From Ylistrum balloti (taxonomy: Eukaryota): 64,000 nucleotides of DNA. The notes beneath the pieces are model-generated. The model searched no databases, was not told the DNA's origin, and was given only the letters and a program-made list of their open reading frames with translations. Numbering within the stretch: position 1 is the first letter of the stretch; each line of letters opens with the position of its first letter. The stretch is from contig NW_026782224.1 of NCBI RefSeq assembly GCF_031769215.1, forward strand, positions 372,001 through 436,000. Direction: 5' to 3'. Position numbers and translations under genes: made by a program. Shown here in pieces: positions 29,102-59,800 of the stretch.

Positions 29102-32100
29102 GTTTTCTGATTGCTTGTACAGAAATGTACAGTGTCACTTGGAGGGTTATGTCTAAGTCGCTTTACTATCTCGGCTAGCGTTTTCTCCTCGTGACAACAT
29201 CGGACAGCAAAGTGTTCGTGGATCCTGTTACAGAAATAGGTTTGTTTCACGCTTCAGGTTTAAATCACATACAAAATGACAAACACAAGTACACTTTAAA
29301 AAGCACAATAATTGGTACAAGTTTATGACTGCTCAAGACTCCGTCAACTATTATATTTTATAACCTGGATATATATGAAGAAATTAATACTTTACAATCT
29401 CGTTGTATCACATTGATTTACTATAACTGACAAAAACCTCTTAACAGATAACATTTGCATGCTGCCAGATTTGACACAGCATACCAACGACCTGCGCGAT
29501 TACATATGAGCTTATTTCTTCTCAATAAAGTAACATAAAGGTTATTATTATTATTTTAATTTTTATAGTTTCTTTTCATCGTTGCCTTAATATAATATAC
29601 TAATGGAAAAAAGTTTGTTTTCGATAATTATTGCTTTACATGATTCATTGATAATAAGTTTATTGTTTGGGTTTTTCGATTATTTCGTCATTACTGGATG
29701 CATTTAAATGTTTTTGATGTCCTATCACAGATGGCGTTTGTGTGAACAAGGGTACCCTACGACTTTCCTAATTCAAATCAGTAGCGTGTGCGCCCACCTC
29801 AGGCTTCAGTTCTTAACACCTATCCCATCAATATGTTTATTGTCCTTTGAGGAATATTATTTCCCTCTTGAATATGGGCATGTGTTAGTTGAGCGTTTCC
29901 TAACCCTTGTGTCCAGCTTGTCCCACAACTGCTCAACTTGGAACAAATTTAGACTGTATGGTGGCAAATCAAGAACTGGGACGTTGTTTTGAGCCAGAAC
30001 GTCACGACAAACCCATCAACATGACGCCTCGCGTTGTCCTGCTGCAACGTAAGGCTACGTTGATGGATAAGAGGAAGGACGTGCGGAATCAAGACCTGGT
30101 CCTGATATGTTGATGGATAAGAGGAAGGACGTGCGGAATCAAGACCTGGTCCTGATGTGTTGATGGATAAGAGGAAGGACGTGCGGAATCAAGACCTGGT
30201 CCTGATATGTTGATGGATAAGAGGAAGGACGTGCGGAATCAAGACCTGGTCCTGATATGTTGATGGATAAGAGGAAGGACGTGCGGAATCAAGACCTGGT
30301 CCTGATGTGTTGATGGATAAGAGGAAGGACGTGCGGAATCAAGACCTGGTCCTGATGTGTTGATGGATAAGAGGAAGGACGTGCGGAATCAAGACCTGGT
30401 CCTGATGTGTTGATGGAACGTGCGGTCAAGACCTGGTCCTGATGTGTTGATGGATAAGAGGAAGGACGTGCGGAATCAAGACCTGGTCCTGATATGTTGA
30501 TGGATAAGAGGAAGGACGTGCGGAATCAAGACCTGGTCCTGATATGTTGATGGATAAGAGGAAGGACGTGCGGAATCAAGACCTGGTCCTGATGTGTTGA
30601 TGGATAAGAGGAAGGACGTGCGGAATCAAGACCTGGTCCTGATGTGTTGATGGATAAGAGGAAGGACGTGCGGAATCAAGACCTGGTCCTGATGTGTTGA
30701 TGGATAAGAGGAAGGACGTGCGGAATCAAGACCTGGTCCTGATATGTTGATGGATAAGAGGAAGGACGTGCGGAATCAAGACCTGGTCCTGATATGTTGT
30801 AAGATTGCCATGGATAATCCTCCTCTGAATCTATCGCTTTCTGTTACTCAACCATCATAATGTCACTCACCATGACGTCGATAGACACGTTGTCGTCCAT
30901 ATGACCTATGTAGCGTGAAGCAAGACTGGTCAGTGAACAGCACAATTCTCCAATGGCCCAAACGGTTAGGTACACGAGCAAGCAGCCATTGCATTAGACA
31001 TTGGCGTCTCCTCTACGTAAATAGCGGACCAATAAAAACTACTTCCCGCAACCGATTCCTAACCGTTTTCGGACACACTGGCCGACCATGAATACTGACA
31101 ACTTGGCGTGCCGTCTGAAGTCTGTTACGGAGGTGCAAGAAACGTCCGCTCCTAGGACGGTCACTAAATGTCCCTATGACTCTGAGAAGTCCAACTAACA
31201 GGGATTATAATGTCTCATGTACACCATATTGTTGGGCTACATTACATTGTGAATGCCCTGCATTATCAGAGCAATGGCCCTACCCCTATCGACATCATCC
31301 TATAGCGGCATCTGTACTGTTCCTATATTTGATTTTTAATGATTGACCAGCACATATGGTGCAGGAGTACCCCGGATGCGCGTTTTCTTGAAAAGTCTTC
31401 TGAAAGCATGCAGCGTCGAGTGGGGTCACGGTCGGCTGAACTTTAACTGAAGAATATGTTCCCAACACAATACACGCAGGTAGCTCAGTGTCAAATTTAA
31501 TCAAATTTCGTCCACGCGTCTAAGAGTCATATTTACAAAACCCGAACTTGCGTTTCTTTTTTCCGTTAGTATATCAAAACCAGCTAGTATAGCTAAAACA
31601 TGATTTTGATATGTTTATAATATTTTATCAAGTATATACATAAGAAATGATTCTCATAATTACCAAACAGAATTAGTCGTCTCATTATTTAAATTGCTTA
31701 TAGGTATAACTGTGTCTAGATTAAATAAAATACCATTTGTAAATGAAAAATGAATTTTCATTGCCAAATGAACTAAGCTTGATTCGCTTTTATCAGTTTC
31801 TGATAAAAGAACAACAACTGTTTGGTTTCGTACAGTTCTACTTTGCACTTCAACATAATGTATATTGAATGAACTCCTGTTCATTATCAAAAAATAGCTC
31901 CGCAAACGCGGGCAATATCCCACAGCCTTATTATAAAGTTAGAAATGTGTGGTTGGGGTGAGTGGAAAGTTATCTCAAGAATGAGATCACCGGAGATCGC
32001 CATTTTCACCGAGCATTTTGGCTCTATGGACGTAAATAAGCCTGTAGATTTTTGTTGGCATTTCCATTCCGCTCATTATGTCAAGACATCACTGCGAATC

Positions 32101-39049: not shown

Positions 39050-39270
39050 CGTGTGAACATTATCATAATCAAAACTCAAATTCAACACAAACAAGCGTAA
39101 AATATGAACAAAAGAAGTGTTTACATACTCCTGAAATGTAAGGAAAATGCGACCAGGTGTTCAAGAGGAGCAGCCATTTCTGCTTCATCGATAACATCTG
39201 CGATGTAAATCTTGGTCAATCCAAGTAATTAATATCACTTTCTCAAATGAGAACCAGGACATTTACACTA
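39050..39270 (-). mobile_element. Solo 3'-end fragment of the Penelope-like family
   Basis: Matches 27500-27680 and 46620-46880 (caaactcaaattc...gaccaggtgttc...ctgcttcatcga...cttggtcaatcc...tctcaaatgagaac). Confidence 0.6.
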
Positions 39271-41003: not shown

Positions 41004-44000
41004 TTATGGCTTTCCCTGTGCCACGCCCTTACTAATTAAGGGCCCTCCTTCGTGAAGATGAAGGGCCGGCCATACTATGTAGTCCAGTTGTTTTCCTTTT
41101 CTTGTATATGCCTTGTATCGTTCTTCGTCGAATATTGTCGAAGCCTCCGCTGTCATTTTGACCTTTGGGTCCTGAACGGCCATGAACCAGGAAATATGCA
41201 CGCATCTCTTCATATATGCCTCGGTCATCTGTCCTATTTTTGCTTTTGACCTTGTCTTTTTCGTGAAATCCTAATTTAGAAAAAAGAAGATATAGAAAAT
41301 TACAAAAGCTAAATGAGTTTTTACAAGATTCAATTAGTATGTATTAGTTCACCATGCAGTCCTTAACAAAGAGAAATGATGTAAATATACCCTGAATTCA
41401 TAGTAATGGTATTCAGGTATGGTAGACAGATATTCATAGTAATATCCTCAGAAGAAGTGAAACGACTTCTAGTGGTTTTAAATATTCCATATCTAATACA
41501 TCCCACTGATAGTAAGGACAACAACCTCTATCGCAAACGATGCAATTACATGCAATATCCCCCGTACCTCTTGTAAGTAGGTAACGGCGTACACAGCCAA
41601 ACTTTTTCGGTAGTCCTTGTTGATTTTCGCGACTTCTTTCGGCATCTTCTGAAATAATAAAAAATGTTAAATGTACATTTACTAAATCAGATAAAGAGGT
41701 AAAATGTAAAATAAGGTTTAAACTTCGATATTTATCATTTCAGGTCTGGTAAAATGTAAGCCCTGCTATAATGGGAACGCATATGAGAGTTAAAACTACA
41801 CCAGTAATATCTGGTTATCAAAAGATTGAAACCACACAGGTAATATTTGTATATCAAAACATTAAAACCTCACAGGAAATACTTGTATATCAAAAGATAT
41901 AAAAATACTGATAAAACACAGGGAATATTTCTATATTAGAAGACTCATACAACACAGGAAATGGTTGTATATCAAAAGGCTGATGCAACACGGGAAATAA
42001 GGCTGATACAACCCGGGAAATAAGGCTAAAACAACACGGGAAATAAGGCTGATACAACACGGGAAATAAGGCTGATGCAACACGGGAAATAAGGCTGATA
42101 TAACACGGGAAATAAGGCTGATGCAACACAGGAAATAAGGCTGATACAACACGGGAAATATTTGTATCTCATTAATTTGACACAGCATAAGGAATGTTTG
42201 TGTGTTAAACACCAGAATAACGTTAATACTAGATGTAATATGTACAAACCACTGTCTCCGTTTGATTTTTGTCTTTACAGTTTGACTTTACCGCCAGAGA
42301 CATTGTCGCTTTATGTAATAAAAAGTAACACAAACTGTTTTCGTGTCATATGACATTTTATGACAGCAAGAAAATTCTTACCGTGAACATAACAATAATC
42401 CACACTCAAATTCAATACAACTAGGGCGAAGGTATAAATAAAATGAAAGATATAAACTGGGACAAGAAAAGTAAGACCAAGTGTTCCGGGCGAACGCCGT
42501 ATACAGGAACGGGGAAAATTATCAAGCAGCAAACACGTCAGCTCCATATCGCACAAAGAAATAGAATATTTCTCAATGAGATCACTATGACGACCAAATA
42601 TTATTCACCAACGCTCGTTTCATGAAATATCATGTGAAATGGAAATAAAAACAAATGTTTATATGTATATCTAAGACCACTGAAGCCTTTATTTATTTTT
42701 CAAATAACATTTGTCTTTTTATTCGATGAGAAATCCACTTTGGATTATTGTTGAAATGTCCTTGCACAGAAAAGAACGAATATTACAAGAATGGCGTCAC
42801 ATGTCAACATACATATCAACACATCCATACACACAAAACAATATCAATTCCCCACTTGAATACTTTCATAGTTCTGGTAAAAATCCGTTATATAACTCAC
42901 CTCAGAAGAACTTAGATCGCCAGAGAATTCTTTGAGGCTGCCATTTATCTTGTTCATAAACTTATCTGATCGTTCAACGCAAAACGTGTACGCATCCTGT
43001 AAAAGTATGAAGTAAGTTGATTCCTTCAGGAAAGTTATTCTATACTGCTTAAGTGGTACCATATTGTGAGTATATACGTTCATCTCTCTTTTAAATTCCA
43101 TGCGGGTTACAATAATAGGACGTATTAGGATGTTAATATATATGTACGGTCAAGAAAACAGCACAGCTTTAAACAGCCATTACGATTATCACAACGCGCC
43201 AGCAGTGCTAAACGTTATTGGTTATGGAGAAAACAATCTGTGATTTCACGTGAATTAATTTTCACCTATCATGCTGGGGTTTAACAGTAAAATAAAATCT
43301 TGGCCAACATTTATGAAGTTTCTGTTGGATAACCCAGTCATTTTGACTAAGTAGGCTTATCTAAGAGTAACTATATCAAATTATGCAAAAACTGCTGAAT
43401 TAATATTACTGACACAATACCGAGTATTAGCAACTGTACTACCAGTTTATCTATGTATGTATCATATCATTAATTATCCCAGATACTAACAAACACCATA
43501 CCGAGTGGTTAATATATCACGTGATATCTTGGAATTACGCCGCCGGGAAGTTACTGTGTCATGTGACACTTGTATGTCCACAGAATAACCAGAAATAGTA
43601 TCATTTGCACAAATCTTGTATGTGTTGTATCATGTGCTACACCATACCTATTAGTTGTTTTTACTGGACACTTACACACACAATAGTCAGCAGTTGTTGT
43701 ATGGTTGTTTTTTCGTCTGGTAATGTGTTCAGCAGCTCCTCCATGGCGTCTGTCCATTCATTGTCATATAATTCCGAAAACTTTTCGCCGAGACTCAAAG
43801 GACGGTTTGGGTCGCTTAGGTCAGCGATTGCAGGATTGTTGTCAGTTAACTGCGCTCCAGCTATTTTACTTAGCCTGATGAAATAGAATCATAGTCGTTT
43901 TATCTGCTACATTGTTACAAATGACAAACAGTCATCCGTACATTCTTCTACATTGAATCATTATCATCACACCATCGGCTAAGACACTTCGGCCAGATAA

Positions 44001-47000
44001 AGCTATTATAGCTAAATAAAAATGCTAGTTAAAATTCATTCGCATATCTAGAACGTAATAGAATATAAAATGTGCCGGGGAATGTCTCTTCTTTAAAACG
44101 TTTATTAGAAGGTATGAACGTTCAAATGATAGAACAACTTTCAAGACGATAGGATAAAACAGGGTAGAGCCAAACAAAATATCTAGCTGCAAACAGCTAT
44201 ATCGTCTTTGGAAGACGGTCTAGAATTGTATTCAAGGATGCTCACTTGAAAAGAACGTTAAGTACATGTCAAAAAACACACAAATGAATAGCATCTTTCC
44301 ATACAAATCTAGAATTATATCTGTACATAAAAGTAAAAAAAGGGTTTTGTATAACAGACCTGATACGCAGATCTTCTACTTCATTTTCGAGCTTCGAAAT
44401 AATTTCCGCTGGTGACAAATTTCCCATCTTTCTTTCTCTATTTACATTTTCTGGCCTGTAATCAAATATGACATGTATAAATTTGGCGATATGTAATTTG
44501 TCATCAAAATAATCGCAGAGAGAGTTCTATACGTCTGTAGGTGACTCCCTTAGTTTGAAAGCCTAATTAAAAGTCCATATCTTTGTCGTCGCCTTTTGAG
44601 AACCTTTTTGATCTAAATCAACGGATTTATTTACATGATTTTTGTTAATCATGACAAGTAAACGCTGATTGACGTCTCTCTATTGACAACCAATGAATCC
44701 CAAGAAATCAATCAGATCAGCTTATTTATTACCGGTCAATTTACTTACAGGTTCTAAAAAAAATTTATGTGGCGTATATACAAGCAAAGAGGATTTGAAT
44801 ATATTATAAACGTAGTGTTTGAAGACGTTTACTAAGTTCCTGGGTGAAAATACGAGTTACATTTTCTCGTTACATTAATCTGCTGGTCAAGGTACATAAT
44901 ACACCAAGTCGATGAAAAATATTGAAACATTGTTGATCCATATATTATATTAATTGTTGTTGTTTTTTTAGATGGCGACGTACATCTTAAAGAATGTGAG
45001 CTATTAATTCTATAAAAAACAGTAAACAGTAATATCAAGGTTCTGGTATCAGGAACTGCAATTTCATGTAATTTTAACTAGGTAATCTATTGAAAGGTTT
45101 ATGGAAATAACGTTATTCAATTTTACGTATTTTGTTTATAATCTACTAGTAACATACGTAATGCGATAAACTATAAAAGATAGATTAAAAGGATTCCATA
45201 CCTCTTTGCTTTGTTTCTTTGCAGCTCCTCTTCATTTTTTTGCTTCTCACTATGTAAATATATGATTCTTATATCAGAAGGTGGTGATATGTCAAATGTA
45301 AATTTCAGAGAGATATAGACTGAGACTGAATAATGCTTGCTACTATAATCAACCGTTACACGTGCGAATTAGTATAACACAGTTATAAAGAATGAATTAT
45401 CTTATTAATGATCTAAGTTGGTCTGACAAATATCTCCTACAGATTATCATCGATAAATATGTCAAATACCAATTAGTTGTTAGTAAAAATAAACGTTCCA
45501 TCGTTTAATGAAAATCGCAGTGAAAGCATACATTTAGAAATTGACTGAACATATTGTTATACTTCCAATTATGCCTTGATGCTATATATGTGCACAAACT
45601 CTATGTCGAATGTTTGAATATTCAAGACGTTCGCAAAACCTTCCCAAGTATAGCGCCGATTGGTAGACACATGACAGAATCTAGGGCGAGGCAGTAACAC
45701 TTAATAACGACGACAGAAAGAATTTAAATGGTGAGGAAAGATTATAGCTTATGACCGATGACGTTAGGAATGGTATCATATGAATAACTTGAAAATTCAC
45801 GTCATATTTATAAATTCTGAGTACAAGGGAATAAACGACGCTAAAATAGCAAGTAATGACATTTATATGACAATTAATAAAACTGAACAGGGCAATGAAC
45901 ACTTACTGATCAATGAAACACCAGGAAAATACCAACGTGGCAACATACCTATTATCCCAACTTAAAAAAGTAGGGCAAAGTATTAACAAAAGATTTATAC
46001 GGAGAACAAGGAGAATAAGACCAGGTGTTACGGAAAGGTAAGCGCCAGCTTCATATCGTACAAGGAAATAGAAAATTGCTCAATGAGATCACCAGAGTGA
46101 TCATAAAACTTTCTTTAACCTGCATCGTTTGATCAGATTAATGATAATTTTTGCGATAACAATGATACAACACTGAAGATGTCTTATTATGGTTACATTT
46201 ATAGTTCCTTAGAGTATGTACATTTGTATAGCAATGGGCTCTTCTCTTAATCGACTTTTGATATATTAACATTCCAACCTTATCCAACCTTATTTTAAGG
46301 ACATGTCGCAAAGCCGCTTTGAACAAACTTGAACACCTTCACTCCCTCCCACCATCCATCCCCACCCCAAACCCACCGACCACCCCGCATAAAGAAGTTG
46401 TTTTTATTGTAGCAAAATTAGATGAATAATCATACTGAAAATGTTTTCTTCTAATTTCATTAACTTACTTTTCGCATTTCAACGACGTATTTTCCTGTCG
46501 AAGTGCTTCTATTGTCTCTTCTTGTTTTTTTCTGTATACAACATTCCAAAAACATTACAAACATGAAAGCAAACAATCAAGCGTATGCGTTCTACAAATT
46601 GTCATTCATGAATTGCGTGGCATTATAATCATTTTTCAAACTCAAATTCCATAAAACGATGGTAGAATATGTACAAAAGAAAGATTTACACGGAGACTTA
46701 TGAAGAAGTACAAAGAGAATAAGATTTGGTGTTCCGGAAGAGTAAGCGTCTTCTGCTTGATTGACGACACCCGCGATTTAAACCTTGTTTAATCCGAGTA
46801 AGTGATGACATGTTTTCAAATGAGAACAAGGTATACAACAACGGAACCAACAGACAAATTGACGAGCATCAAGTACGTCCTGCTTTATAAAAATGCCCCA
46901 TAATTTTCATCTAACTGCAGCTTTAGATCGCTTGTGTTTCAAATTTGTCAATCAGATAACGACTTCTTGTACAAAAATCGTGACAATGCAAACTGGTCCT

Positions 47001-47477
47001 TGAATATCGAATCGACTGTGACATGTAATTACCATTTTTGGAGATGAAAGGTTATTGCTATCCAGAAATGGAAAATTCACAATACGGAGATTGAAATCAT
47101 TACGTTTATCATACAGATTGATAGAGCGCTGCCCATCTTGGTTCCATTGTAGGAAAGATCGAGATAAGCAGCTGATTTAGAAGAGTCTGTCGTATCTTTG
47201 ATTTCCAGTTCTGGCGGATATATACTTCTCTAATTATTTTATGACAATACGGTATCAATATATCTGAAGGTGAAGTTAAATGACTTTGAAAAGTGACCTG
47301 TTTTGATAAGTTCTTCAATAAATTCAGTCTCGTATGGAAACAAAAACTAGTCAGCCAACAGAGGGATGCAGGTGGTTCCCATATATATGCCAATAGTCTG
47401 TTGGAATATTTTACATACCACCAAACTCGGGGAAGATGTTGCCAACCAGAAACTCGATCATTTATATATGTATGTGT

Positions 47478-47509
<32 letters not shown>

Positions 47510-50500
47510 CGTTTTTGGTTTGGACGTATTTTTTACGAAATACTCTTCAGTTCACAACCATATATTTATATTGCCGTTCCCGAAAAAATCCTCATAACAA
47601 GAGACCGAAAGCGTTCCTTCATTTTGGAATGGAGTATGGTGGTGTAGAAGGTGGAAAAATCAAAAGTTCTTATAGTAGAAAGGTTATTAGAAGAGGTGTT
47701 GAAGATTGTTCAAAAGCTCTTTTCATTTCTTCACAATCCACATACTATTCATCCCACTTCCTGAGTAAACAGTATCACAATAAGAGAAAGGCTTAGTTGA
47801 ACCATTAGACAGGCCAGGTATAAAACGTTGTTTATATGAATTCTTGTGATGTTTAAGGATCCATTATCAACGGGGAAGGTCCGTATCGAAGACGATGCTT
47901 CTTCTTTTTTAATATATGAAAAATCTGGCATTTGAAAGACATGAAATACTTTACGAAATGGGAAGCGGAAATGATTAGTTGATCATAAAACTTATTCATC
48001 ATCGATTAACGCAAACAATTATAAAACATTCTAAGAAAGACAGATGAAGATATGTGTTTAGGTCAGATAAGATATAAAAAAAAAACTTTTACTAGGATTC
48101 CAGAAAATATCATAGTCATGTGATATATACACGCAGATCTGTTGCAATATAACTACACAAGCATGCACTATTACAGCTGAATTACTGTAACAACAATGAT
48201 TTAAAAATGATGTCATTTTAAAACTTCTTTTGTATGTCCATTTGTTTGCATTTTGAAAAAAATGAAGGATTTACAGTGTAAACATACATGTTTTCTATGA
48301 ATGAAAAAAGTTTTGTTTTCATATTTTCCCTCGTTATTGACCAATTAAATCACATTGTCTGCAAAGAAAACAACTTGTACTCGGGTTATGCCAGTTTGTT
48401 CGCGCGGGAAGTCTTTTTTATATAACCTTCACCTCGAAAATCTGAGTAAGAGTTTAGTCAGTTCGAAGGCTGACTAAACGAAAACATCCAGGTGTGAAAA
48501 TATTCATATTTGCAGTATTACTTTATATTCACAGATTCTATCTTCATGATTTAAAAGAAATTATATACACATATATCATAAAAAGGAAGCCGTCTTCCAT
48601 TATAGTAAAATTAGATGAATAATTTTACTGAAATACTTATTATCATTATCAGTTTAACTTACGTTTGGCGTATCATCGATGCATTTTCCTGTTGAAGTGC
48701 CTGTATTGCTTCTTCTTGTTTTTTTCTGTAAACAGTATATGGAAAACATGACATATACGAATTCAAACCTTTGTTTTCTTAATGTACATTTAACTATAAG
48801 GAGAAGCCCTCGTGAGTTGTAATACACTTGTGTCTAATCCTTTTGCTATTACATTTGACAATAAAATCTGTTTAAACTAAACTCTCAAACATTTAAGCTT
48901 TAGTTCTCTCACTACGCGTAGTACAGACGTTTGTGGAAGCTTCTATTGGAATTTATTATGATTTGAAAACTATCGTCATTTAAAAGACATGAAATACTTT
49001 CCGAAATGGGAAGCGGAAACGATTAGTTCATCATAAGATTTATATATCATCGATTAAAGCAAACAATTATGAAACATTCTGAGAAAGATAGATGAAGACA
49101 TGTATATGTATTAGATGAAATATCAAAAGCGTTTACTAGGATTCCAGAAAATATGATCATGTTGATATACACACACAGATCTGTTGCACAATAACTACAT
49201 AATAATGGCTTTATTACAACTGAATTTCTGTACAAACCATGATATAATAACAGTATCGTCTTGAAACTTCTTTTGTATATCAATTTATTGGCATTTTTGA
49301 AATCAAACTGAAGGATTTACATTGCTAACATACATATTTTCAATGAGTGAAAATAGCACTTTAAAAAAAAAAAAAAAAAATTTTCTCGTTGTTAACCAAT
49401 TAGATCATCTGTAAGAAATTGGCGTTTTTACTGCAAACAAATGAAAACGCCAGTTTCTTACAGAAAACAACTCATACTCGGGTTTGCCAGTTTGACCGAG
49501 AACAGCATATACCTTTATCATATATGATTTAAAAGATTTTATCCAAGTATTTATCATAAAAAAAGATCAAATTTCGTCGTAATTATTATGGAAAATAAAA
49601 CTTTTTTATCTACGGAAACCATGTCAAATTGTACATCGATATTTCATCCATTATAACTCAATGCACATCTATATGTTACAGAAACAACCATACTTATTCC
49701 CACTGAGGTTTCTTTCCATGTCCATTTGTTGTGTCTGATTTTGTAAGTTCTCTCTGGAAATGGGGAAAATAATTGTAAGTGTGATGTTAATAGTTAGGAA
49801 TACTTATCTAACACGTACATGTATATCTATATAAACAGTTTTTGGATTAAAATTGACATTAATCTTCAGTGTGCAAGTTCTTAAAGAAATAAAAAAAATC
49901 AGCTCATGAACATGCGAAATGAACAACTTTTCCAATTTCAAATGTTAATTTATGCATTATTTATGCGGTGTTGTCTTCAAATCACACGAACGCAACCAAC
50001 GTCAAACAGTGCAGTGTTCACCCCTGATTACTTTCGGTTTTTAGCAGAAAAATGTGATATTTATAAACACCTTGAATTTCCTGTTAACCCCTTCAAGAAT
50101 CTCCATTTTCCCCCTTTTTCCGACCTTACGTCGATTCAGTATTTGAAAATCACTTACATTTTGCGGGATATTTATTTTTGCGTTAATGCGCAAATTCAGA
50201 TCTCTCGCGATTACATGATATATTCAACGGAAGTAAACACGTTTGGAATAGAGTATGTCAAAAGTATGAATTTGCTTTGTTATGTTACATGTAAAAAGAG
50301 TGGTCGACGTGTATATTTTTAAAACATAATTATATCAAAATTGCCAGTACAAGCCCTAAAAACTGCTTTAGAGTATAATTGTGACAAAATATGAAACTAG
50401 GAAAAAGGAAGAGACTGATCAGTGAGAGTTATATGTTTTTAATTATCCCTAAATAACACATATACATATTTACGGACGGACGTCGCGGTATCCTTATAGT

Positions 50501-53500
50501 TGATTTGGTCATGAGAGCTGTAAAATGCTTTTAGTTGTTCGGATTTAAGTTATGTGTAGTCAATTATATTTCACAAATTAATCAAACGCTGTGGGCTAAA
50601 TCCCTGTATAGCTGCAACAGGTTCTTTAGAGGGACTCATTTTAGTTCTGATACTGCAAAAACATATGAGGCATAAGGTTTCAACACGCCTTAAGTCAAGC
50701 TTTGAGACTGCCAATTCCCTGACATACACCACATTTGTAAAACTAATAATGATAACAAACTAATTACATTTATTATGAGTACAAAAACAAGTATCGATCA
50801 TTACAAATACGAGGTTTTGAAACAGAAGCCTACCTGTCACGTGAGATGTCTGATATTTCCCTCTTCAGTGCTTTTACTGTGTCTTCTAGCATCTCTCTTG
50901 AAATGAATATGATTTACTGGATATTATATAAGTTTTTTATACAAATACTGGTGATTAGATCGTGATTATTAATGTTACCATGACATACGTGAATTGTTTA
51001 CTTAAAGCGACAAAAATTTGCACGGCGGGTGTCGTCGTTGACAAAGACGATAATAATAGTCCAAGCATAATTTTTGCGCTGCTTCATTTTACTTTAGCCG
51101 TAAGAAAGGTGTCATTTAATTTTGTAGATTTTATCATTCTTCTATCATTCTTAATCAAAGTACTGGTCGGGAACTTGTTGATATAACTTATTGTGTAAAT
51201 ATATCCTCTAGTAAAGATGATGATAAAGCATTAACATACCTGTTCTTCGTGAGTTCTGTATTTTCTCTCTGCAATTGCTCTACCTGTCCATGCACACTTC
51301 TGTGGAAATATCAAATCGATTTTACATTTGATTTGGACAGTGTGACTATCAAAATTAGCCATTCACTGGCGTTTTCCCTTTAAATGGCTGTACAAAAAAC
51401 ACACAAGTTATATATCCTCGGTATGATAACAAATTATATATCTCAAACATGTTCACATATACCCACGAAATGTCAACAAATTATATATTCCAAACATGCT
51501 CACAAATACCCATGAAATGTCAACAAATTATATATCCCCAACATGCTCACAAATACCCACGAAATGTCAACAAATTATATATCCCCAACATGCTCACAAA
51601 TACCCACGAAATGTCAACAAATTATATATCCCAAACATGCTCACAAATACCCACGAAATGTCAACAAATTATATATCCCCAACATGCTCACAAATACCCA
51701 CGAAATGTCAACAAATTATATATCCCCAGCATGCTCACAAATACCCACGAAATGTCAACAAATTATATATCCCCAGCATGCTCACAAATACCCACGAAAT
51801 GTCAACAAATTATATATCCCCAGCATGCTCACAAATACCCACGAAATGTCAAACAAGTTACTAATGTTAATGCATATATCCCGGGTATAACAGATCATCT
51901 CTTAAAACACTTGCGTACCTGTTTTTTGAGAGGTCCGACTTCTCCTTCTCCAGTCGTTTAACCTTATCTTCTAGGTCTTTTCTTGAAATTGATAAGACAT
52001 TTTTTACTGTAGTTTTTTAGTAGCAGGACAATTTATTTTCTGTCCCCAATTTCATGCAAAATCTATAAATATAATTTCGTAAAACAAGCACAATAATGTC
52101 GATTCCATTTGGTTCAAAATCCATTCTTAGTTTAGGTTTGCGAAAGTGAACAACAAAATAGCATCACTTGCTGACCAATCAGCTATATCACTTGTCTTTG
52201 AACATAACTATTTGAGACTTTCTTTCCTACTGAGTTTGCATTCTTTAGTAATTAATGTCACGTTCCCATTTTAGGATGTGACTTTACGTTTTTTGGATTT
52301 GCCAAAATTTACACAACGGATGTCGTCGATGAAGGTCAACACGCTTCACATTCCAGAACGCCTGATTTTAACATCTTTTTTCAGTGGCCAGTTTTGAGAT
52401 GTTGCTGTCGGCAACAAATGAAGACTACCCCATATCAATCGCTACACCAGTATTAAGGAAATGCTGAGAAAAGATCACTTATGCAAAAGCAGTTTCTTGT
52501 TTCTCACTTTCTGCTCCTAATATCATATGCAGCGCAAAAATTACTTCTAAAGAACCGCTACGCAAAAGCTTTCCGATACAAAAATCCCTGATTTATAATG
52601 ATGTAAAAACGACAAAAAATCATTTTAACAGAGCCTTGATTCAAACTCAAATTCGATCAACTATGAACAAAAGAAAGAAAAGTGTCAAGCATAATCTTTG
52701 CGCTGCATCATTTTACTTTAGCCGTAAGGAAGGTGTCATTTAATTTTGTAGATTTTATCATTCTTCTATCATTCTTAATCAAAGTACTGGTCGGGAACTT
52801 GTTGATATAACTTATTGTGTAAATATATCCTCTAGTAAAGATGATGATAAAGCATTAACATACCTGTTCTTCGTGAGTTCTGTATTTTCTCTCTGCAATT
52901 GCTCTACCTGTCCATGCACACTTCTGTGGAAATATCAAATCGATTTTACATTTGATTTGGACAGTGTGACTATCAAAATTAGCCATTCACTGGCGTTTTC
53001 CCTTTAAATGGCTGTACAAAAAACACACAAGTTATATATCCTCGGTATGATAACAAATTATATATCTCAAACATGTTCACATATACCCACGAAATGTCAA
53101 CAAATTATATATTCCAAACATGCTCACAAATACCCATGAAATGTCAACAAATTATATATCCCCAACATGCTCACAAATACCCACGAAATGTCAACAAATT
53201 ATATATCCCCAACATGCTCACAAATACCCACGAAATGTCAACAAATTATATAACCCCAACATGCTCACAAATACCCACGAAATGTCAACAAATTATATAT
53301 CCCCAACATGCTCACAAATACCCACGAAATGTCAACAAATTATATATCCCCAGCATGCTCACAAATACCCACGAAATGTCAACAAATTATATATCCCCAG
53401 CATGCTCACAAATACCCACGAAATGTCAACAAATTATATATCCCCAGCATGCTCACAAATACCCACGAAATGTCAAACAAGTTACTAATGTTAATGCATA

Positions 53501-56446
53501 TATCCCGGGTATAACAGATCATCTCTTAAAACACTTGCGTACCTGTTTTTTGAGAGGTCCGACTTCTCCTTCTCCAGTCGTTTAACCTTATCTTCTAGGT
53601 CTTTTCTTGAAATTGATAAGACATTTTTTACTGTAGTTTTTTAGTAGCAGGACAATTTATTTTCTGTCCCCAATTTCATGCAAAATCTATAAATATAATT
53701 TCGTAAAACAAGCACAATAATGTCGATTCCATTTGGTTCAAAATCCATTCTTAGTTTAGGTTTGCGAAAGTGAACAACAAAATAGCATCACTTGCTGACC
53801 AATCAGCTATATCACTTCCATGTCTTTGAACATAACTATTTGAGACTTTCTTTCCTACTGAGTTTGCATTCTTTAGTAATTAATGTCACGTTCCCATTTT
53901 AGGATGTGACTTTACGTTTTTTGGATTTGCCAAAATTTACACAACGGATGTCGTCGATGAAGGTCAACACGCTTCACATTCCAGAACGCCTGATTTTAAC
54001 ATCTTTTTTCAGTGGCCAGTTTTGAGATGTTGCTGTCGGCAACAAATGAAGACTACCCCATATCAATCGCTACACCAGTATTAAGGAAATGCTGAGAAAA
54101 GATCACTTATGCAAAAGCAGTTTCTTGTTTCTCACTTTCTGCTCCTAATATCATATGCAGCGCAAAAATTACTTCTAAAGAACCGCTACGCAAAAGCTTT
54201 CCGATACAAAAATCCCTGATTTATAATGATGTAAAAACGACAAAAAATCATTTTAACAGAGCCTTGATTCAAACTCAAATTCGATGAACTATGAACAAAA
54301 GAAAGAAAAGTGTCAAGCATAATCTTTGCGCTGCTTCATTTTACTTTAGCCGTAAGGAAGGTGTCATTTAATTTTGTAGATTTTATCATTCTTCTATTAT
54401 TCTTAATCAAAGTACTTGTCGGGAACTTGTTGATATAACTTATTGTGTAAATATATCCTCTAGTAAAGATGATGATAAAGCATTAACATACCTGTTCTTC
54501 GTGAGTTCTGTATTTTCTCTCTGCAATTGCTCTACCTGTCCATGCACACTTCTGTGGAAATATCAAATCGATTTTACATTTGATTTGGACAGTGTGACTA
54601 TCAAAATTAGCCATTCACTGGCGTTTTCCCTTTAAATGGCTGTACAAAAAACACACAAGTTATATATCCTCGGTATGATAACAAATTATATATCTCAAAC
54701 ATGTTCACATATACCCACGAAATGTCAACAAATTATATATTCCAAACATGCTCACGAATACCCACGAAATGTCAACAAATCATATATCCCAAACATGCTC
54801 ACAAATACCCATGAAATGTCAACAAATTATATATCCCCAACATGCTCACAAATACCCACGAAATGTCAACAAATTATATATCTCAAACATGCTCACAAAT
54901 ACCCACGAAATGTCAACAAATTATATATCCCCAGCATGCTCACAAATACCCACGAAATGTCAACAAATTATATATCCCCAACATGCTCACAAATACCCAC
55001 GAAATGTCAACAAATTATATATCCCCAGCATGCTCACAAATACCCACGAAATGTCAACAAATTATATATCCCCAACATGCTCACAAATACCCACGAAATG
55101 TCAACAAATTATATATCCCCAACATGCTCACAAATACCCACGAAATGTCAACAAATTATATATCCCCAGCATGCTCACAAATACCCACGAAATGTCAAAC
55201 AAGTTACTAATGTTAATGCATATATCCCGGGTATAACAGATCATCTCTTAAAACACTTGCGTACCTGTTTTTTGAGAGGTCCGACTTCTCCTTCTCCAGT
55301 CGTTTAACCTTATCTTCTAGGTCTTTTCTTGAAATTGATAAGACATTTTTTACTGTAGTTTTTTAGTAGCAGGACAATTTATTTTCTGTCCCCAATTTCA
55401 TGCAAAATCTATAAATATAATTTCGTAAAACAAGCACAATAATGTCGATTCCATTTGGTTCAAAATCCATTCTTAGTTTAGGTTTGCGAAAGTGAACAAC
55501 AAAATAGCATCACTTGCTGACCAATCAGCTATATCACTTGTCTTTGAACATAACTATTTGAGACTTTCTTTCCTACTGAGTTTGCATTCTTTAGTAATTA
55601 ATGTCACGTTCCCATTTTAGGATGTGACTTCACGTTTTTTGGATTTGCCAAAATTTACACAACGGATGTCGTCGATGAAGGTCAACACGCTTAACATTCC
55701 AGAACGCCTGATTTTAACATCTTTTTTCAGTGGCCAGTTTTGAGATGTTGACGTCCGCAACAAATGAAGACTACCCCATATCAATCGCTACACCAGTATT
55801 AAGGAAATGCTGAGAAAAGATCACTTATGCAAAAGCAGTTTCTTGTTTCTCACTTTCTGCTCCTAATATCATATGCAGCGCAAAAATTACTTCTAAAGAA
55901 CCGCTACGCAAAAGCTTTCCGATACAAAAATCCCTGATTTATAATGATGTAAAAACGACAAAAAATCATTTTAACAGAGCCTTGATTCAAACTCAAATTC
56001 GATCAACTATGAACAAAAGAAAGAAAAGTGTCCTAAACAAGTACAAGGAAAATAAGACCAGGTGTTCTGAAAGGATAAGCATCTCCTGCTTCATAGACGA
56101 CACCTGTTATTTAAATCCTGGCCAATCGATGCTACTTTTTCAAACGAGAATAGTTACGGAACTAGAATGGATATTGACGAGCATCAACTACGTTCATTAT
56201 TTTTTATCGCAAAAGGACAACAACAGAGGTAGGTTTATATCAAATAAATCAAATAAATGTATCAACCTAAGATAAACTGCTATGTTTCCGCACAGGGTTC
56301 CTGTACCGCTCTGCATTGAGATAAAGAAAAGATAGTACTTTTTTAAAAGTCAAGAAAATAGATTGTACATATACCTCATTTCCTCTGTCTGAGTTAGCTG
56401 AACCTTACATGTTTGTAGATTTTTTCTCAGTACATCATCGTCTTTG
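41004..56446 (-). CDS. MIEAP/SPATA18 C-terminal-domain coiled-coil protein, paralogue B (5' partial)
   Basis: Exons 56446-56375, 55327-55265, 54551-54492, 53605-53543, 52923-52864, 51981-51919, 51299-51240, 49753-49694, 48725-48663, 46531-46469, 45249-45202, 44455-44360, 43874-43676, 42996-42901, 41648-41568, 41270-41004 join in frame. Motifs NNPAIADLSDPNRPLSLGEKFSELYDNEWTDAME and RYKAYTRKGKQLDYIVWPALHLHEGGPLISKGVAQ. The last four exons have the same phases as in paralogue A. Confidence 0.8.
41978..42158. repeat. 23-bp minisatellite, ~8 copies, intronic in gene B
   Basis: Unit ggctgatacaacacgggaaataa. Confidence 0.9.
42380..42620 (-). mobile_element. Solo 3'-end fragment of the Penelope-like family
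   Basis: ctcaaattcaatacaactaggg...taagaccaagtgttccgg...ctcaatgagatcac, shared with the other copies. Confidence 0.5.
45960..46140 (-). mobile_element. Solo 3'-end fragment of the Penelope-like family
   Basis: aaggagaataagaccaggtgttacggaaaggtaagcg...ctcaatgagatcac...aacctgcatc, as at 27510-27750. Confidence 0.55.
46380..49500. repeat. Older diverged tandem duplication of a ~1-kb intron plus 63-nt exon unit
   Basis: 46400-46540 resembles 48590-48735 (exon and flanks). 47930-48395 resembles 48978-49496. The Penelope-like copy sits in one unit only. Confidence 0.75.
46620..47720 (-). mobile_element. Penelope-like element RT remnant (same family as 27500-28520)
   Basis: QQTIGIYMGTTCIPLLAD*FLFPYETEFIEELIKTG and IYPPELEIKDTTDSSKSAAYLDL. 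Collinear with the 27.5-28.5 kb copy; contains an inserted (TG)n tract. Confidence 0.85.
51062..56031. repeat. Tandem triplication of a 1.62-1.72-kb unit (51062-52685, 52686-54313, 54314-56031), each with two coding exons and a 47-bp minisatellite
   Basis: Direct alignment gives unit lengths of 1624, 1628 and 1718 bp. Unit 2 has a 4-bp insertion near 53817; unit 3 has two extra 47-bp monomers and several SNPs. Confidence 0.95.
51432..51851. repeat. 47-bp minisatellite, ~9 copies (also 53056-53475, ~9 copies, and 54682-55197, ~11 copies)
   Basis: Unit acatgctcacaaatacccacgaaatgtcaacaaattatatatcccca. Confidence 0.95.
55985..56190 (-). mobile_element. Solo 3'-end fragment of the Penelope-like family spanning the triplication breakpoint
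   Basis: caaactcaaattc...gtacaaggaaaataagaccaggtgttc...ctgcttcatagacgacacc...ttgacgagcatcaa. Its first ~45 bp are repeated at the end of each triplicated unit. Confidence 0.6.
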
Positions 56447-56876
56447 CTACAAAGGAACAATATTACAAATTATGTTTTATAACAATAGTGTATATCATAG
56501 TGTGTACAAAAAAGTTATCTTTTATAGAAAAGACTTTTTTCTTCCCATAAGTCTCAAATTGATACTATTTACACTGTACTTACGACAAGTTCCAATCTAC
56601 ACATTCCGACTGACTCTACTTACGACACATTTGAATGACATGTTTGTTTTGAAACCGATTAGAACATTTTAAAAATCAGTTTTGAAAGGCATGTGTATAG
56701 AAAGAAAAATGGATTTCCGTGTTTTAAATATGTATATATTTAACAAGCTTATCAATACCTATGTATGTGCAAAAATGATTGGAAGAAAAAATGCTTGAAA
56801 GAAAAGATATATGATGCTTCCATTACAAGTGAAATCCAAGTATAGTAATGGTATCATAGTAAAACTTTGTACAAAC

Positions 56877-59800
56877 CTTTGTTGTATCTCTGCGCTGAAA
56901 TGTCAATAATTGTCGTTATAAGTATACAGGAATATATAGCACTGAAACGCATACTGTTGGATTATTTAGCTTTCCTCACACTATCACTTCTATATACTAG
57001 GTAAATTACTCTGTTAATAGATGTTTTGCAAAAGTACATGTTAAATCATTGCCCATTTACAAAAACTAAAAAACAAAAAAAAAAAAAAAAAAAGAAGAAA
57101 TGGGCAGATCTAGTATTCCTACTCAACACCTAACAAATAATACCTTCTAAATATGATTCTGATCGAGTAAAGCAGAGGCAGACTATAGACATTTGACAGA
57201 GGCAGACTATAGACATTTGACAGAGGCAGACTATAGACATTTGACAGAGGCAGACTATAGACATTTGACAGAGGCAGACTATAGACATTTGACAGAGGCA
57301 GACTATAGACCATTTGACAGAGGCAGACTATAGACATTTGACAGAGGCAGACTATAGACCATTTGACAGAGGCAGACTATAGACCATTTGACAGAGGCAG
57401 ACTATAGACCATTTGACAGGGGCAGACTATAGACATTTGACAGAGGCAGACTATAGACCAGTTGGCAGAGGCAGACTATAGACCATTTGACAGAGGCAGA
57501 CTATAGACCATTTGGCAGAGGCAGACTATAGAGCATTTGACAGGGGCAGACTATAGACATTTGACAGAGGCAGACTATAGACCAGTTGGCAGAGGCAGAC
57601 TATAGACCAGTTGGCAGAGGCAGACTATAGACATTTGACAGAGGCAGACTATAGACATTTGACAGAGGCAGACTATAGACCAGTTGGCAGAGGCAGACTA
57701 TAGACCATTTGACAGAGGCAGACTATAGACCATTTGGCAGAGGCAGACTATAGAGCATTTGACAGGGCAGACTATAGACATTTGACAGAGGCAGACTATA
57801 GACCAGTTGGCAGAGGCAGACTATAGACATTTGACAGAGGCAGACTATAGACATTTGACAGAGGCAGACTATAGACATTTGGAACCAAGTGTTACCTTCT
57901 GTATTCAGGGTTTATTCTATCTCTACATGGTATTCCAATATAAATCCGATCTGAACATAAACTATGTTTTTTGGTCAATTTGCTTGTCATTTCACATGAT
58001 CGCCCTATAGACAGACTAAGGATCGTCCGAGTTTTTGTACTGAGTTCTAAATGCTGTTCGAGAATCCGAAGCTGATGAGGACCGGTCCTAAATGGTTTAA
58101 CTTCCGGGATGGCTAATCATATGTTTTTAGGAAAAGCGACAACACAACCTGCAATTATTCTTCGCGTTTAAAAGGTATAAAATGTTATATATTTTTAAGG
58201 ATTGAAAGGCATATGTGTTTGTCCTATACATGTTGCGCTGAATATTTTTTAATAAAAGATCGACTAACATTGTGCCTGCTTTTAAATTTCCACATAATAC
58301 CGTTGGCACATTCGTCATCATTCACGTGGAAGCATCAAAGCGTTTTTGCCAAAACGCCTGTAGTGACATTTTGATACATTCAAACAAAAATGGTTTCGGG
58401 TGTATATGGTATCAGTATCTCAATAAAATATATCTGTTAAAATACGTACTTTTGTGACCCAGTTGTATTTTTCAATTTTGGTGGTGGTAGTTCTGCATTT
58501 GATTCAAATCTGAAAATATCATTTATGGCTTGAAAAAGCAAACGGGTTCGTGATATGTTTGATATTTCTACGACACAAAAACAAAGCAAACAAACGGATC
58601 ACTCATTTGATTGATAAAAAGTGGTATCGATTTCTTATTGAAATAAATTTATGCGCGTTTGAATATATTTTAAATTAAAACCAGTATATATCGCTAACTA
58701 AAATGGAGACACAATATCGCCAGTCTTTGGTAGACAATATGTCCGCTTTCAAATGATTACATTTATCATAACTGAATAAAGGAGATGTTAACGTTAGGAA
58801 ATACAATTTCGTGACGTTCAATATTTCAAAGTCAACTAATCGGTCAGTTCAACGTTTGTACGCAGACTTCGAGAGATAACATAACGACGGATCGTCCTAA
58901 GGTAAATTTGTCATGTCAGGGTTCGTCACTGGACTCAACAAGGGTCGTCATTAATTAACGCTGACCTGTCACTGGTCATCAATTATTAACTATTACACCA
59001 TCCTGTCACAGGTCGTCACGTGACACGGATCATCACGGGCATACATCTTCCTGTCACATGTCGTCACGAGCTTACGGAACCCTGATATAGATCACCAAGG
59101 CCTTACACCATCCTGTCACATGTCGTCAGGAGCTTTCGGAACCCTGATATAGATCATCACGGGCTTACATCATCCTGTCACATGTCGTCAGGAGCTTACG
59201 GAACCCTGACATGGATCATCACGGGCTAACATCACCCTGTCACATGTCGCCACGAGCTTACGGGACCCTGACAAAGAACATCACGGGGTTACGCCTTCCT
59301 ATTACAAGTCGTCACGAGCTTAAGCGACCCTGACAAGGACCACCATCGCCTTACACCATCCTGTATATGATATGTATAATAAATTATAAAATCATATATA
59401 TAATTTGCCTATATGAAAATCTGGACAGGTGTAACAAGCATGTAATAAAATGGCGTTTCTATCACAACAATACAATTAATGTACATACGCTTTCTCTATT
59501 TGGTCAACATCCTCTTCATAGCGTGATAATCTCACTAACAACTTCTGTATGAAAACAATAGCCCTAAAGCAAAGAATCACAACAAAAATATACAAAAAGT
59601 GAACCAACTTCATTTTTATGTCTATCATATTTTTGTAAGATTTCTTATTATTTTCTAAACTGCAAATTCCTAAAGTTGATTCGACATATATGGAATTGAA
59701 ATAATGTCTGATTATTATAATTAGATAATTATATTATATATATATATTATATTATTATAATATCTGATATCTACCTTCGATTGTTGTCATTTGATAAGCC

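What the first reader, a model, noticed from the sequence alone, without database searches (positions are those of the whole stretch)
51062..56031. Coiled coil lengthened by a recent triplication of a two-exon cassette in a MIEAP-domain gene
Seen: each 1.62-1.72-kb unit holds two minus-strand phase-2/2 exons that the ORF track misses. One is 63 nt (KDLEDKVKRLEKEKSDLSKNR, 21 aa = 3 heptads); the other is 60 nt (SVHGQVEQLQRENTELTKNR). The exons are identical in all three copies, while the introns differ by SNPs, a 4-bp indel and minisatellite copy number. Inference: each extra unit adds 41 aa of coiled coil in frame, so rod length could be a copy-number-variable trait driven by unequal crossover. 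The 63-nt exon uses an AAG acceptor, which is less common than CAG or TAG.
Basis: partly seen in the sequence, partly recalled or inferred. Interest (0 to 1): 0.72.

Follow-up and report, generated by a model that had tools for sequence, protein, structure and literature searches.

The report
Scallop coiled-coil gene: triplicated exon pair
A saucer-scallop gene of the bivalve-expanded "mitochondria-eating protein" family carries a real, very young, in-frame threefold tandem copy of a two-exon block; this adds 82 residues to its helical rod, is an ordinary kind of gene growth already in the public gene model, and may vary in copy number between animals.

Summary
Window 51062-56031 is a head-to-tail triplication with units of 1624, 1628 and 1718 bp. 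U1 and U2 differ by 0.37%; U3 differs from either by 1.05%, plus two extra 47-bp minisatellite copies. Each unit carries a 63-nt and a 60-nt minus-strand exon, phase 2/2, identical in all copies.

These exons are already annotated. RefSeq protein XP_060073304.1 (Ylistrum balloti, 491 aa, misnamed "myosin heavy chain-like") maps perfectly onto 17 minus-strand exons (58318-41007), including all six cassette exons and their AAG acceptors. The protein is a helical rod (about residues 17-262) followed by a MIEAP domain (306-487).

The closest Pecten maximus homologue has one such exon pair and its own duplication of a different rod cassette. The triplication therefore arose after the two lineages split.

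Short-read contigs from two samples span the unit-to-unit junction, which argues against an assembly artefact. In two other samples the contigs run flank-unit-flank without a branch, which hints at single-unit alleles. This evidence comes from contigs only.

No RNA run was available, so inclusion of all six exons is unproven. The identity of the exons is not evidence of selection (chance P = 0.22).

An overlapping note of this scan (s1-244232) describes the same rod. Verdict: a real, ordinary new member of a known kind.

The parts
51062..56031 (.). Tandem triplicated block (three head-to-tail units)
51062..52685 (.). Unit U1 (1624 bp), last in the transcript
   Evidence: 0.37% from U2
52686..54313 (.). 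Unit U2 (1628 bp; private 4-bp insertion at 53817-53820)
54314..56031 (.). Unit U3 (1718 bp; two extra 47-bp minisatellite copies; 1.05% from U1 and U2), first in the transcript
55265..55327 (-). 63-nt cassette exon, copy in U3 (AAG acceptor, GT donor, phase 2/2)
54492..54551 (-). 60-nt cassette exon, copy in U3 (CAG acceptor)
53543..53605 (-). 63-nt cassette exon, copy in U2
52864..52923 (-). 60-nt cassette exon, copy in U2
51919..51981 (-). 63-nt cassette exon, copy in U1
51240..51299 (-). 60-nt cassette exon, copy in U1
51428..51860 (.). 47-bp minisatellite (9.2 copies) in the intron between the 63- and 60-nt exons of U1. The same array lies at 53052-53484 (9.2 copies) and 54680-55206 (11.2 copies).
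56375..56446 (-). Upstream 72-nt rod exon (phase 2/2), outside the repeat
50834..50896 (-). Old paralogue of the 63-nt exon (same tttcAAG acceptor). It aligns to the cassette only over the exon plus about 17 nt on each side, at 69% DNA identity.
49694..49753 (-). Next 60-nt rod exon. It follows the old 63-nt exon in the same 63/60 order as the cassette, but shows no detectable sequence similarity to the cassette's 60-nt exon.
48663..48725 (-). 63-nt rod exon. It has a roughly 70%-identical older duplicate at 46469-46531.
41007..58318 (-). Whole coding span of the gene (17 exons, 491 aa), equal to RefSeq XP_060073304.1
41007..41270 (-). Last coding exon, the C-terminal part of the MIEAP domain
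56032..56128 (+). Dispersed high-copy repeat directly abutting the right breakpoint. Inverted 72-73% copies lie inside each unit at 52296-52370, 53924-53998 and 55642-55716.
   Evidence: (depth about 16000)

Best explanation
The block is a genuine, very young intragenic tandem triplication in a Ylistrum balloti gene of the bivalve-expanded MIEAP-domain family.

Both breakpoints lie in introns (51061/51062 and 56031/56032). Each unit therefore carries two complete symmetric phase-2 exons (63 + 60 nt) with their own acceptors and donors. Each hybrid intron keeps 178 nt of the original donor side and about 705 nt of the original acceptor side.

The first duplication probably arose by a microhomology-type junction (GTC is shared at the two breakpoints). 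The third copy probably came from unequal crossover between the first two: U1 and U2 are sisters at 0.37%, and U3 is 1.05% from both.

If all copies are spliced in, as the public gene model does, the N-terminal alpha-helical rod grows by 41 residues (about 6 nm) per unit. Each cassette consists of two three-heptad blocks with a one-residue register slip at a Gly-containing hinge.

Because the copies are less diverged than alleles are in the flanks, the array is probably still segregating in copy number.

Shown: the DNA structure, the exon structure, the frame, the domain content, helicity, single copy in Pecten, and the junction in independent short-read data. Inferred: the order of events, inclusion of all copies in mRNA, copy-number polymorphism, and any functional effect.
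For: - Repeat anatomy and differences between units.
- The exons, with their splice sites and phases, equal RefSeq XP_060073304.1 over 17 exons and 1473 nt.
- MIEAP domain at 66 bits against a cut-off of 27.
- Hydrophobic periodicity of 6.85 and 3.45 residues (41/6 and 41/12), with a register step of -1 per cassette.
- AlphaFold2 helices at residues 19-58, 65-97 and 111-243.
- The Pecten maximus homologue (47% identity overall) aligns with one copy of each cassette exon and carries a separate 56-aa tandem duplication.
- The old paralogous 63-nt exon is conserved only over the exon and keeps the AAG acceptor.
- 111-nt contigs span the unit junction (52616-52726) in X1 and X3. Contig ends fall exactly at the expected branch nodes, 51102 and 54273.
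- Flank contigs differ from the reference by about 1.1-2.2% (5-6 of 438 nt and 9 of 403 nt), against 0.4-1% between units.
Against: - No RNA run holds the stretch, so splicing of any or all six exons was not observed.
- The RefSeq model was predicted on this same assembly, so it is not independent for copy number.
- Logan contigs cannot count copies: two versus three units in any sample is unresolved, and one DNA run may be the assembly's own source.
- The absence of a junction in X2 and X5 rests on the listed contigs only; 2104 pieces were not shown.
- The exons' identity across copies is not significant (P = 0.22).
Confidence: 0.8

Rival explanations
1. Assembly artefact: one or two real units were over-expanded, or haplotypes were stacked, by the assembler.
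For: Copy number was not measurable from contigs. Contigs of X2 and X5 run from flank into unit and from unit into flank without a branch. Unit-contig depths are not three times the flank depths, although that tool says depth must not be used.
Against: Junction-spanning contigs are present in X1 and X3, with graph breaks at exactly the expected nodes. The three units have private SNPs, a private 4-bp indel and different minisatellite lengths in a tree-like pattern. The contig is 2.1 Mb long, which suggests a long-read assembly that would easily span a 5-kb array (an inference). No second haplotig of the locus exists in the assembly.
Confidence: 0.07
2. The DNA triplication is real, but the mature mRNA does not carry all six exons. 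The identical symmetric exons would be skipped or used alternatively, so the protein rod would be shorter or variable by splicing rather than by genotype.
For: All rod exons are symmetric phase 2/2, so any can be skipped in frame. The 63-nt exon has a weaker AAG acceptor. The Pecten maximus homologue has at least seven annotated isoforms. No RNA evidence was obtained here.
Against: Every copy keeps complete, identical splice signals and long stretches of native intron on both sides. The old paralogous exon with the same AAG acceptor has been kept open and in frame. The public model includes all six exons.
Confidence: 0.2
3. The triplication is real and expressed but fixed in the species, so it is not a copy-number-variable trait.
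For: Only contig-level data bear on polymorphism, and contigs show presence, not absence.
Against: Divergence between units (0.37-1.05%) is below or near the allelic divergence in the flanks (1.1-2.2%). X2 and X5 show unbranched flank-unit-flank contigs, while X1 and X3 show the junction. Near-identical 1.6-kb tandem units are classic substrates for unequal crossover (established knowledge).
Confidence: 0.3

Closest known systems
Mieap/SPATA18 (vertebrate mitochondria-eating protein) and the bivalve-expanded MIEAP orthogroups
   Same: Both have a C-terminal PF16026 MIEAP domain preceded by a hydrophilic coiled-coil-containing N-terminal half. Human Mieap has two coiled-coil domains flanked by disordered regions that drive condensate formation (PMC10845071). 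The family is strongly expanded in bivalves (PMC8382680). At least 35 six-frame matches to the domain (exon-level hits, not a gene count) occur in this genome, two of them in this window.
   Different: This is a distant bivalve paralogue, not the SPATA18 orthologue. Its rod is built almost entirely of 60-72-nt symmetric exons and is far more regular. No function has been tested. RefSeq names it 'myosin heavy chain-like', which reflects coiled-coil composition only.
LPA kringle IV-2 two-exon copy-number repeat (own knowledge, not tested here)
   Same: It is a tandem genomic unit of a few kb that holds two complete exons. The array is in frame and the units are nearly identical. Copy number sets the protein's length.
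   Different: The LPA unit encodes a folded kringle domain and ranges from 1 to more than 40 copies with proven population variation. Here the unit encodes 41 residues of helical rod, three copies are seen, and variation is only hinted at.
Nebulin (NEB) triplicate region (own knowledge, not tested here)
   Same: It is a recent triplication of an exon block inside a gene for a repetitive, ruler-like structural protein, and its copy number varies between individuals.
   Different: The NEB block has eight exons in a 10.5-kb unit and encodes actin-binding super-repeats. Its relation to protein length and disease is documented.
Pecten maximus homologue XP_033743214.1 ('trichohyalin-like', P0006)
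   Same: It has the same architecture and 47% identity. The MIEAP domain is well conserved, and the rod is made of the same 20-21-residue blocks.
   Different: It has one copy of the 63/60-type pair. It carries an independent tandem duplication of a different 56-residue rod segment and a longer N-terminus.

Membership tests
MIEAP-domain family (Pfam PF16026) | MIEAP domain scoring above Pfam's gathering cut-off | tested here: met
   P0002 residues 306-487 match profile positions 4-193 of 195 at 66 bits (cut-off 27). The last exon alone scores 46.7 bits.
MIEAP-domain family (Pfam PF16026) | Helical or coiled-coil region N-terminal to the domain, as in human Mieap | tested here: met
   Heptad-like periodicity. 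AlphaFold2 helices at 19-58, 65-97 and 111-243. Human architecture from PMC10845071.
MIEAP-domain family (Pfam PF16026) | Role in mitochondrial quality control or cardiolipin condensates | not testable with these tools
   No functional data exist for any bivalve paralogue. This is an analogy only.
In-frame multi-exon tandem copy-number repeat (LPA KIV-2 / NEB triplicate type) | Tandem, nearly identical genomic units, each with complete exons and intact splice sites | tested here: met
In-frame multi-exon tandem copy-number repeat (LPA KIV-2 / NEB triplicate type) | The coding length of each unit is a multiple of three, with matching entry and exit phases | tested here: met
   63 + 60 = 123 nt, and all exons are phase 2/2.
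In-frame multi-exon tandem copy-number repeat (LPA KIV-2 / NEB triplicate type) | Copy number differs between individuals | tested here: inconclusive
   Junction contigs and graph branching appear in X1 and X3. X2 and X5 show unbranched flank-unit-flank contigs. The data are contigs only, and many pieces were not listed.
In-frame multi-exon tandem copy-number repeat (LPA KIV-2 / NEB triplicate type) | All copies are included in the mRNA | not testable with these tools
   No RNA run holds the stretch. The word search found only the RefSeq model itself.
Canonical heptad coiled coil | Hydrophobic a/d periodicity of 3.5 residues over long helices | tested here: met
   Peaks at 6.85 and 3.45 residues, with a regular one-residue register slip per 41-residue cassette at the boundary between the 63-nt and 60-nt exons. 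Predicted helical.
Canonical heptad coiled coil | Actual oligomeric supercoiling | not testable with these tools
   Only a monomer model was made. In it the rod folds back on itself at low-confidence hinges.

The most novel reading that the evidence does not exclude
The rod length of this MIEAP-family protein segregates in wild saucer scallops as one-, two- and three-cassette alleles. More generally, rods of the bivalve-expanded MIEAP family would evolve quickly by gain and loss of symmetric exon cassettes: Pecten has an independent duplication and Argopecten a much shorter rod. Cassette number would then tune oligomer or condensate geometry under selection.
Probability: 0.3. Interest if true: 0.5.

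Novelty: new member of a known kind. Interest (0 to 1): 0.3.

Why it matters
This is a clean, datable example of how long coiled-coil rods grow. Symmetric 20-21-residue exons are copied as a block by an intronic tandem duplication and then by unequal crossover, without disturbing the reading frame.

If the copy number really varies between animals, it gives a natural length series of one protein in a family that is hugely expanded in bivalves and functionally unstudied. That series could be used to ask what rod length does.

It also shows that the RefSeq name 'myosin heavy chain-like' for this protein is misleading. Beyond that it is an ordinary structural polymorphism in one gene.

Tried and rejected
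- RNA evidence: the look-up of sequencing runs returned only five DNA runs kept as contigs and no RNA, so splicing could not be examined.
- Copy number from depth: contig depths do not balance in the graph (unit contigs are about 1-1.7 times the flank contigs while junction contigs are present), and the tool warns against using them. I therefore dropped any copy-number estimate.
- Independent protein or transcript evidence for the rod: the word search with residues 17-262 of P0002 found only P0002 itself. The rod is too low in complexity for that index.
- Fetching genomic loci: I looked up P0002 in the assembly collection and the Pecten locus of P0006 to compare introns and the acceptor. Both returned 'not on record'.
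- Purifying selection on the duplicated exons: rejected as untestable, because zero differences in 123 nt is expected 22% of the time.
- An in-frame alternative CAG acceptor upstream of the 63-nt exon: the nearest CAG lies 25 nt upstream, which is out of frame (read).
- N-terminal exons homologous to the longer Pecten N-terminus: not found in the window by tblastn.
- Joined spliced model: I handed no self-joined spliced model to any search or fold tool. The only full-length sequence used there was the public protein P0002 that a search returned. In one search a script concatenated the mapped exons solely to check that they translate to P0002.

Full report
**1. What is in the sequence**

Window 51062-56031 consists of three head-to-tail units: U1 51062-52685 (1624 bp), U2 52686-54313 (1628 bp) and U3 54314-56031 (1718 bp). 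Identity falls from about 100% to background within a few bases at both outer edges.

The three-way alignment has 20 substitution columns, a 4-bp insertion private to U2 (53817-53820), and 94 extra bases in U3. Those 94 bases are two more copies of a 47-bp minisatellite, which has 9.2, 9.2 and 11.2 copies in the three units.

U1 and U2 differ at 0.37% of sites. U3 differs from each at 1.05%, or 0.76% outside the minisatellite. The simplest history is therefore two steps: a duplication, then a second event that made U1 and U2.

The outer breakpoints and the inner junctions share the trinucleotide GTC (read). That fits a microhomology junction for the first event. Unequal crossover for the second event is an inference.

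The assembly (648.5 Mb, 1372 contigs) has no other copy of the unit. The only other matches are to a short dispersed repeat at unit offset about 1200-1320.

**2. The exons**

| Exon | Copies (minus strand) | Acceptor | Donor |
|---|---|---|---|
| 63 nt | 55327-55265, 53605-53543, 51981-51919 | tttcAAG | AG\|gtacgc |
| 60 nt | 54551-54492, 52923-52864, 51299-51240 | ccaCAG | AG\|gtatgt |

All six are phase 2/2 and identical between copies.

That identity proves nothing about selection. With 19 variable columns in 1624 bp (the count used; one search lists 20, giving about 0.21), the chance that none falls in the 123 exonic bases is 0.22.

Better evidence that these are true exons comes from older relatives:
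- The next exon downstream (50896-50834, also 63 nt, also tttcAAG) aligns to the cassette's 63-nt exon at 69% DNA identity. The alignment covers only the exon and about 17 nt on either side; the surrounding introns are unalignable.
- It is followed by a 60-nt exon (49753-49694), so the 63/60 order recurs, although that exon shows no detectable similarity to the cassette's 60-nt exon.
- Further downstream is a pair of 63-nt exons that duplicate each other (48725-48663 and 46531-46469, about 70% at protein level).

**3. The gene**

A scan of the assembly with Pfam MIEAP (PF16026) gave at least 35 six-frame, exon-level matches, which is not a gene count. Two are in this window on the minus strand, at 17788-18147 and 41019-41228.

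A search with the last exon of the second gene returned a 100%-identical 491-aa protein, P0002. This is RefSeq XP_060073304.1, 'myosin heavy chain, cardiac muscle isoform-like', from Ylistrum balloti, the saucer scallop.

Walking that protein along the minus strand gives 17 exons from 58318 to 41007 that translate to it exactly. They include all six cassette exons with the AAG acceptors. That model was predicted on this same assembly, so it is not independent evidence for three copies.

Pfam places MIEAP at residues 306-487 (66 bits, cut-off 27). The other matches are sub-threshold coiled-coil families. Exons 2-13 of the model are all phase 2/2 and 60-96 nt long.

**4. Is the rod a coiled coil?**

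The hydrophobicity of residues 17-262 has its strongest periodicities at 6.85-6.9 and 3.45 residues. These equal 41/6 and 41/12, so each 41-residue cassette behaves as six heptads minus one residue.

A register trace shows the a/d frame stepping by -1 once per cassette. The step falls at the boundary between the 63-nt and 60-nt exons, where a His-Gly sits.

AlphaFold2 was run on the public protein with 39 homologues (mean pLDDT 81.6). It predicts helices at 19-58, 65-97 and 111-243. Low-confidence breaks fall at that hinge in the first two cassettes, and the MIEAP domain is confidently folded. The monomer model folds the rod back on itself, so it says nothing about the real oligomer.

Each cassette would add roughly 6 nm of helix. 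This figure is an inference from 0.15 nm per residue.

**5. Comparison with relatives**

The closest homologue in the library is Pecten maximus XP_033743214.1 (P0006, 536 aa, one of several isoforms). It is 47% identical overall and much more conserved in the MIEAP half.

It aligns to one copy of each cassette exon; the other two Ylistrum copies have no equivalent in the Pecten protein. It also has its own tandem duplication of a different 56-residue rod segment.

An Argopecten irradians relative has only 258 aa and a very short rod. Several other family members show internal rod repeats.

Rod length therefore changes repeatedly in this group by cassette duplication, and the triplication arose after the Ylistrum and Pecten lineages split. 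The bivalve expansion of the family is on record (PMC8382680).

In human Mieap the N-terminal half, which contains coiled coils and disordered regions, has the potential to drive phase separation into condensates (PMC10845071). Transfer of that role to this distant paralogue is conjecture.

**6. Real or artefact, fixed or variable?**

Only five DNA runs, kept as Logan contigs, hold the stretch, and there is no RNA run. Four runs were laid on 50700-56500.

Samples X1 and X3:
- Each has a 111-nt contig spanning a unit-to-unit junction (52616-52726).
- The left-flank contig ends at 51102, and the unit contig ends at 54273.
- These are exactly the nodes where a tandem array must branch in a k-mer graph.

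Samples X2 and X5:
- The left-flank contig runs on into the unit (to 51519 and 51289).
- A unit contig runs straight into the right flank (54268 joined to 55993, which is the U3-equivalent position).
- No junction contig is listed.

This argues against an assembly artefact and hints at single-unit alleles. However, contigs show presence, not absence; 2104 pieces were not listed; one run may be the assembly's own source; and depths do not balance, so no copy number is claimed.

The flank contigs differ from the reference by about 1.1-2.2%, more than the units differ from each other. A young, still-segregating array is therefore plausible.

Four differences shared by all four runs fall in the flanking rod exons. 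Two are synonymous and two are conservative replacements (K to E, T to K).

**7. Verdict**

The feature is an ordinary kind of event: intragenic tandem duplication of a symmetric exon cassette, comparable from my own knowledge to the LPA KIV-2 repeat or the nebulin triplicate region. It lies in a gene that is already annotated, though misleadingly named.

Two things remain open: inclusion of all six exons in mRNA, and population copy-number variation. No self-joined spliced model was given to any search or fold tool; only the public protein returned by a search was used.

Noticed in passing
window 56032-56128; inverted copies at 52296-52370, 53924-53998 and 55642-55716; also 27502-27595, 39140-39221 and 46668-46878: A short dispersed repeat family, at summed contig depth of about 16000 in short-read contigs, starts exactly at the right breakpoint of the triplication. 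It also sits inverted inside each unit. It might have helped the first rearrangement.
   Followed up: partly
window 17788-18147 (minus): A second MIEAP-domain gene lies 23 kb downstream on the same strand as a tandem paralogue. An 800-bp stretch at 27736-28540 matches 46900-47706 at 75%.
   Followed up: no
window 57173-57881: A 25-bp (74-bp super-period) minisatellite of 29 copies lies in the first intron of the gene. Other long minisatellites lie at 21854-23305 (40-bp period) and 30056-30799 (50-bp period).
   Followed up: no
window 58269-58318 (minus): The RefSeq model starts with a 16-residue first exon that aligns to an internal part of the Pecten homologue, which has 64 more N-terminal residues. 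The Ylistrum model may lack 5' exons; none was found in the window by tblastn.
   Followed up: partly
window 41568-41645 (minus): The 78-nt exon has a tandem CAGAAG acceptor (NAGNAG type). The public model uses the distal AAG.
   Followed up: no
window 55987-56047: Short-read contigs show small allelic indels (6, 1, 39-47 bp) around the right breakpoint, and G instead of C at 56004. G is the state of reference unit U2.
   Followed up: no
P0006 (Pecten maximus XP_033743214.1) residues about 186-296: An independent tandem duplication of a 56-residue rod segment, and at least seven annotated isoforms of the gene.
   Followed up: partly
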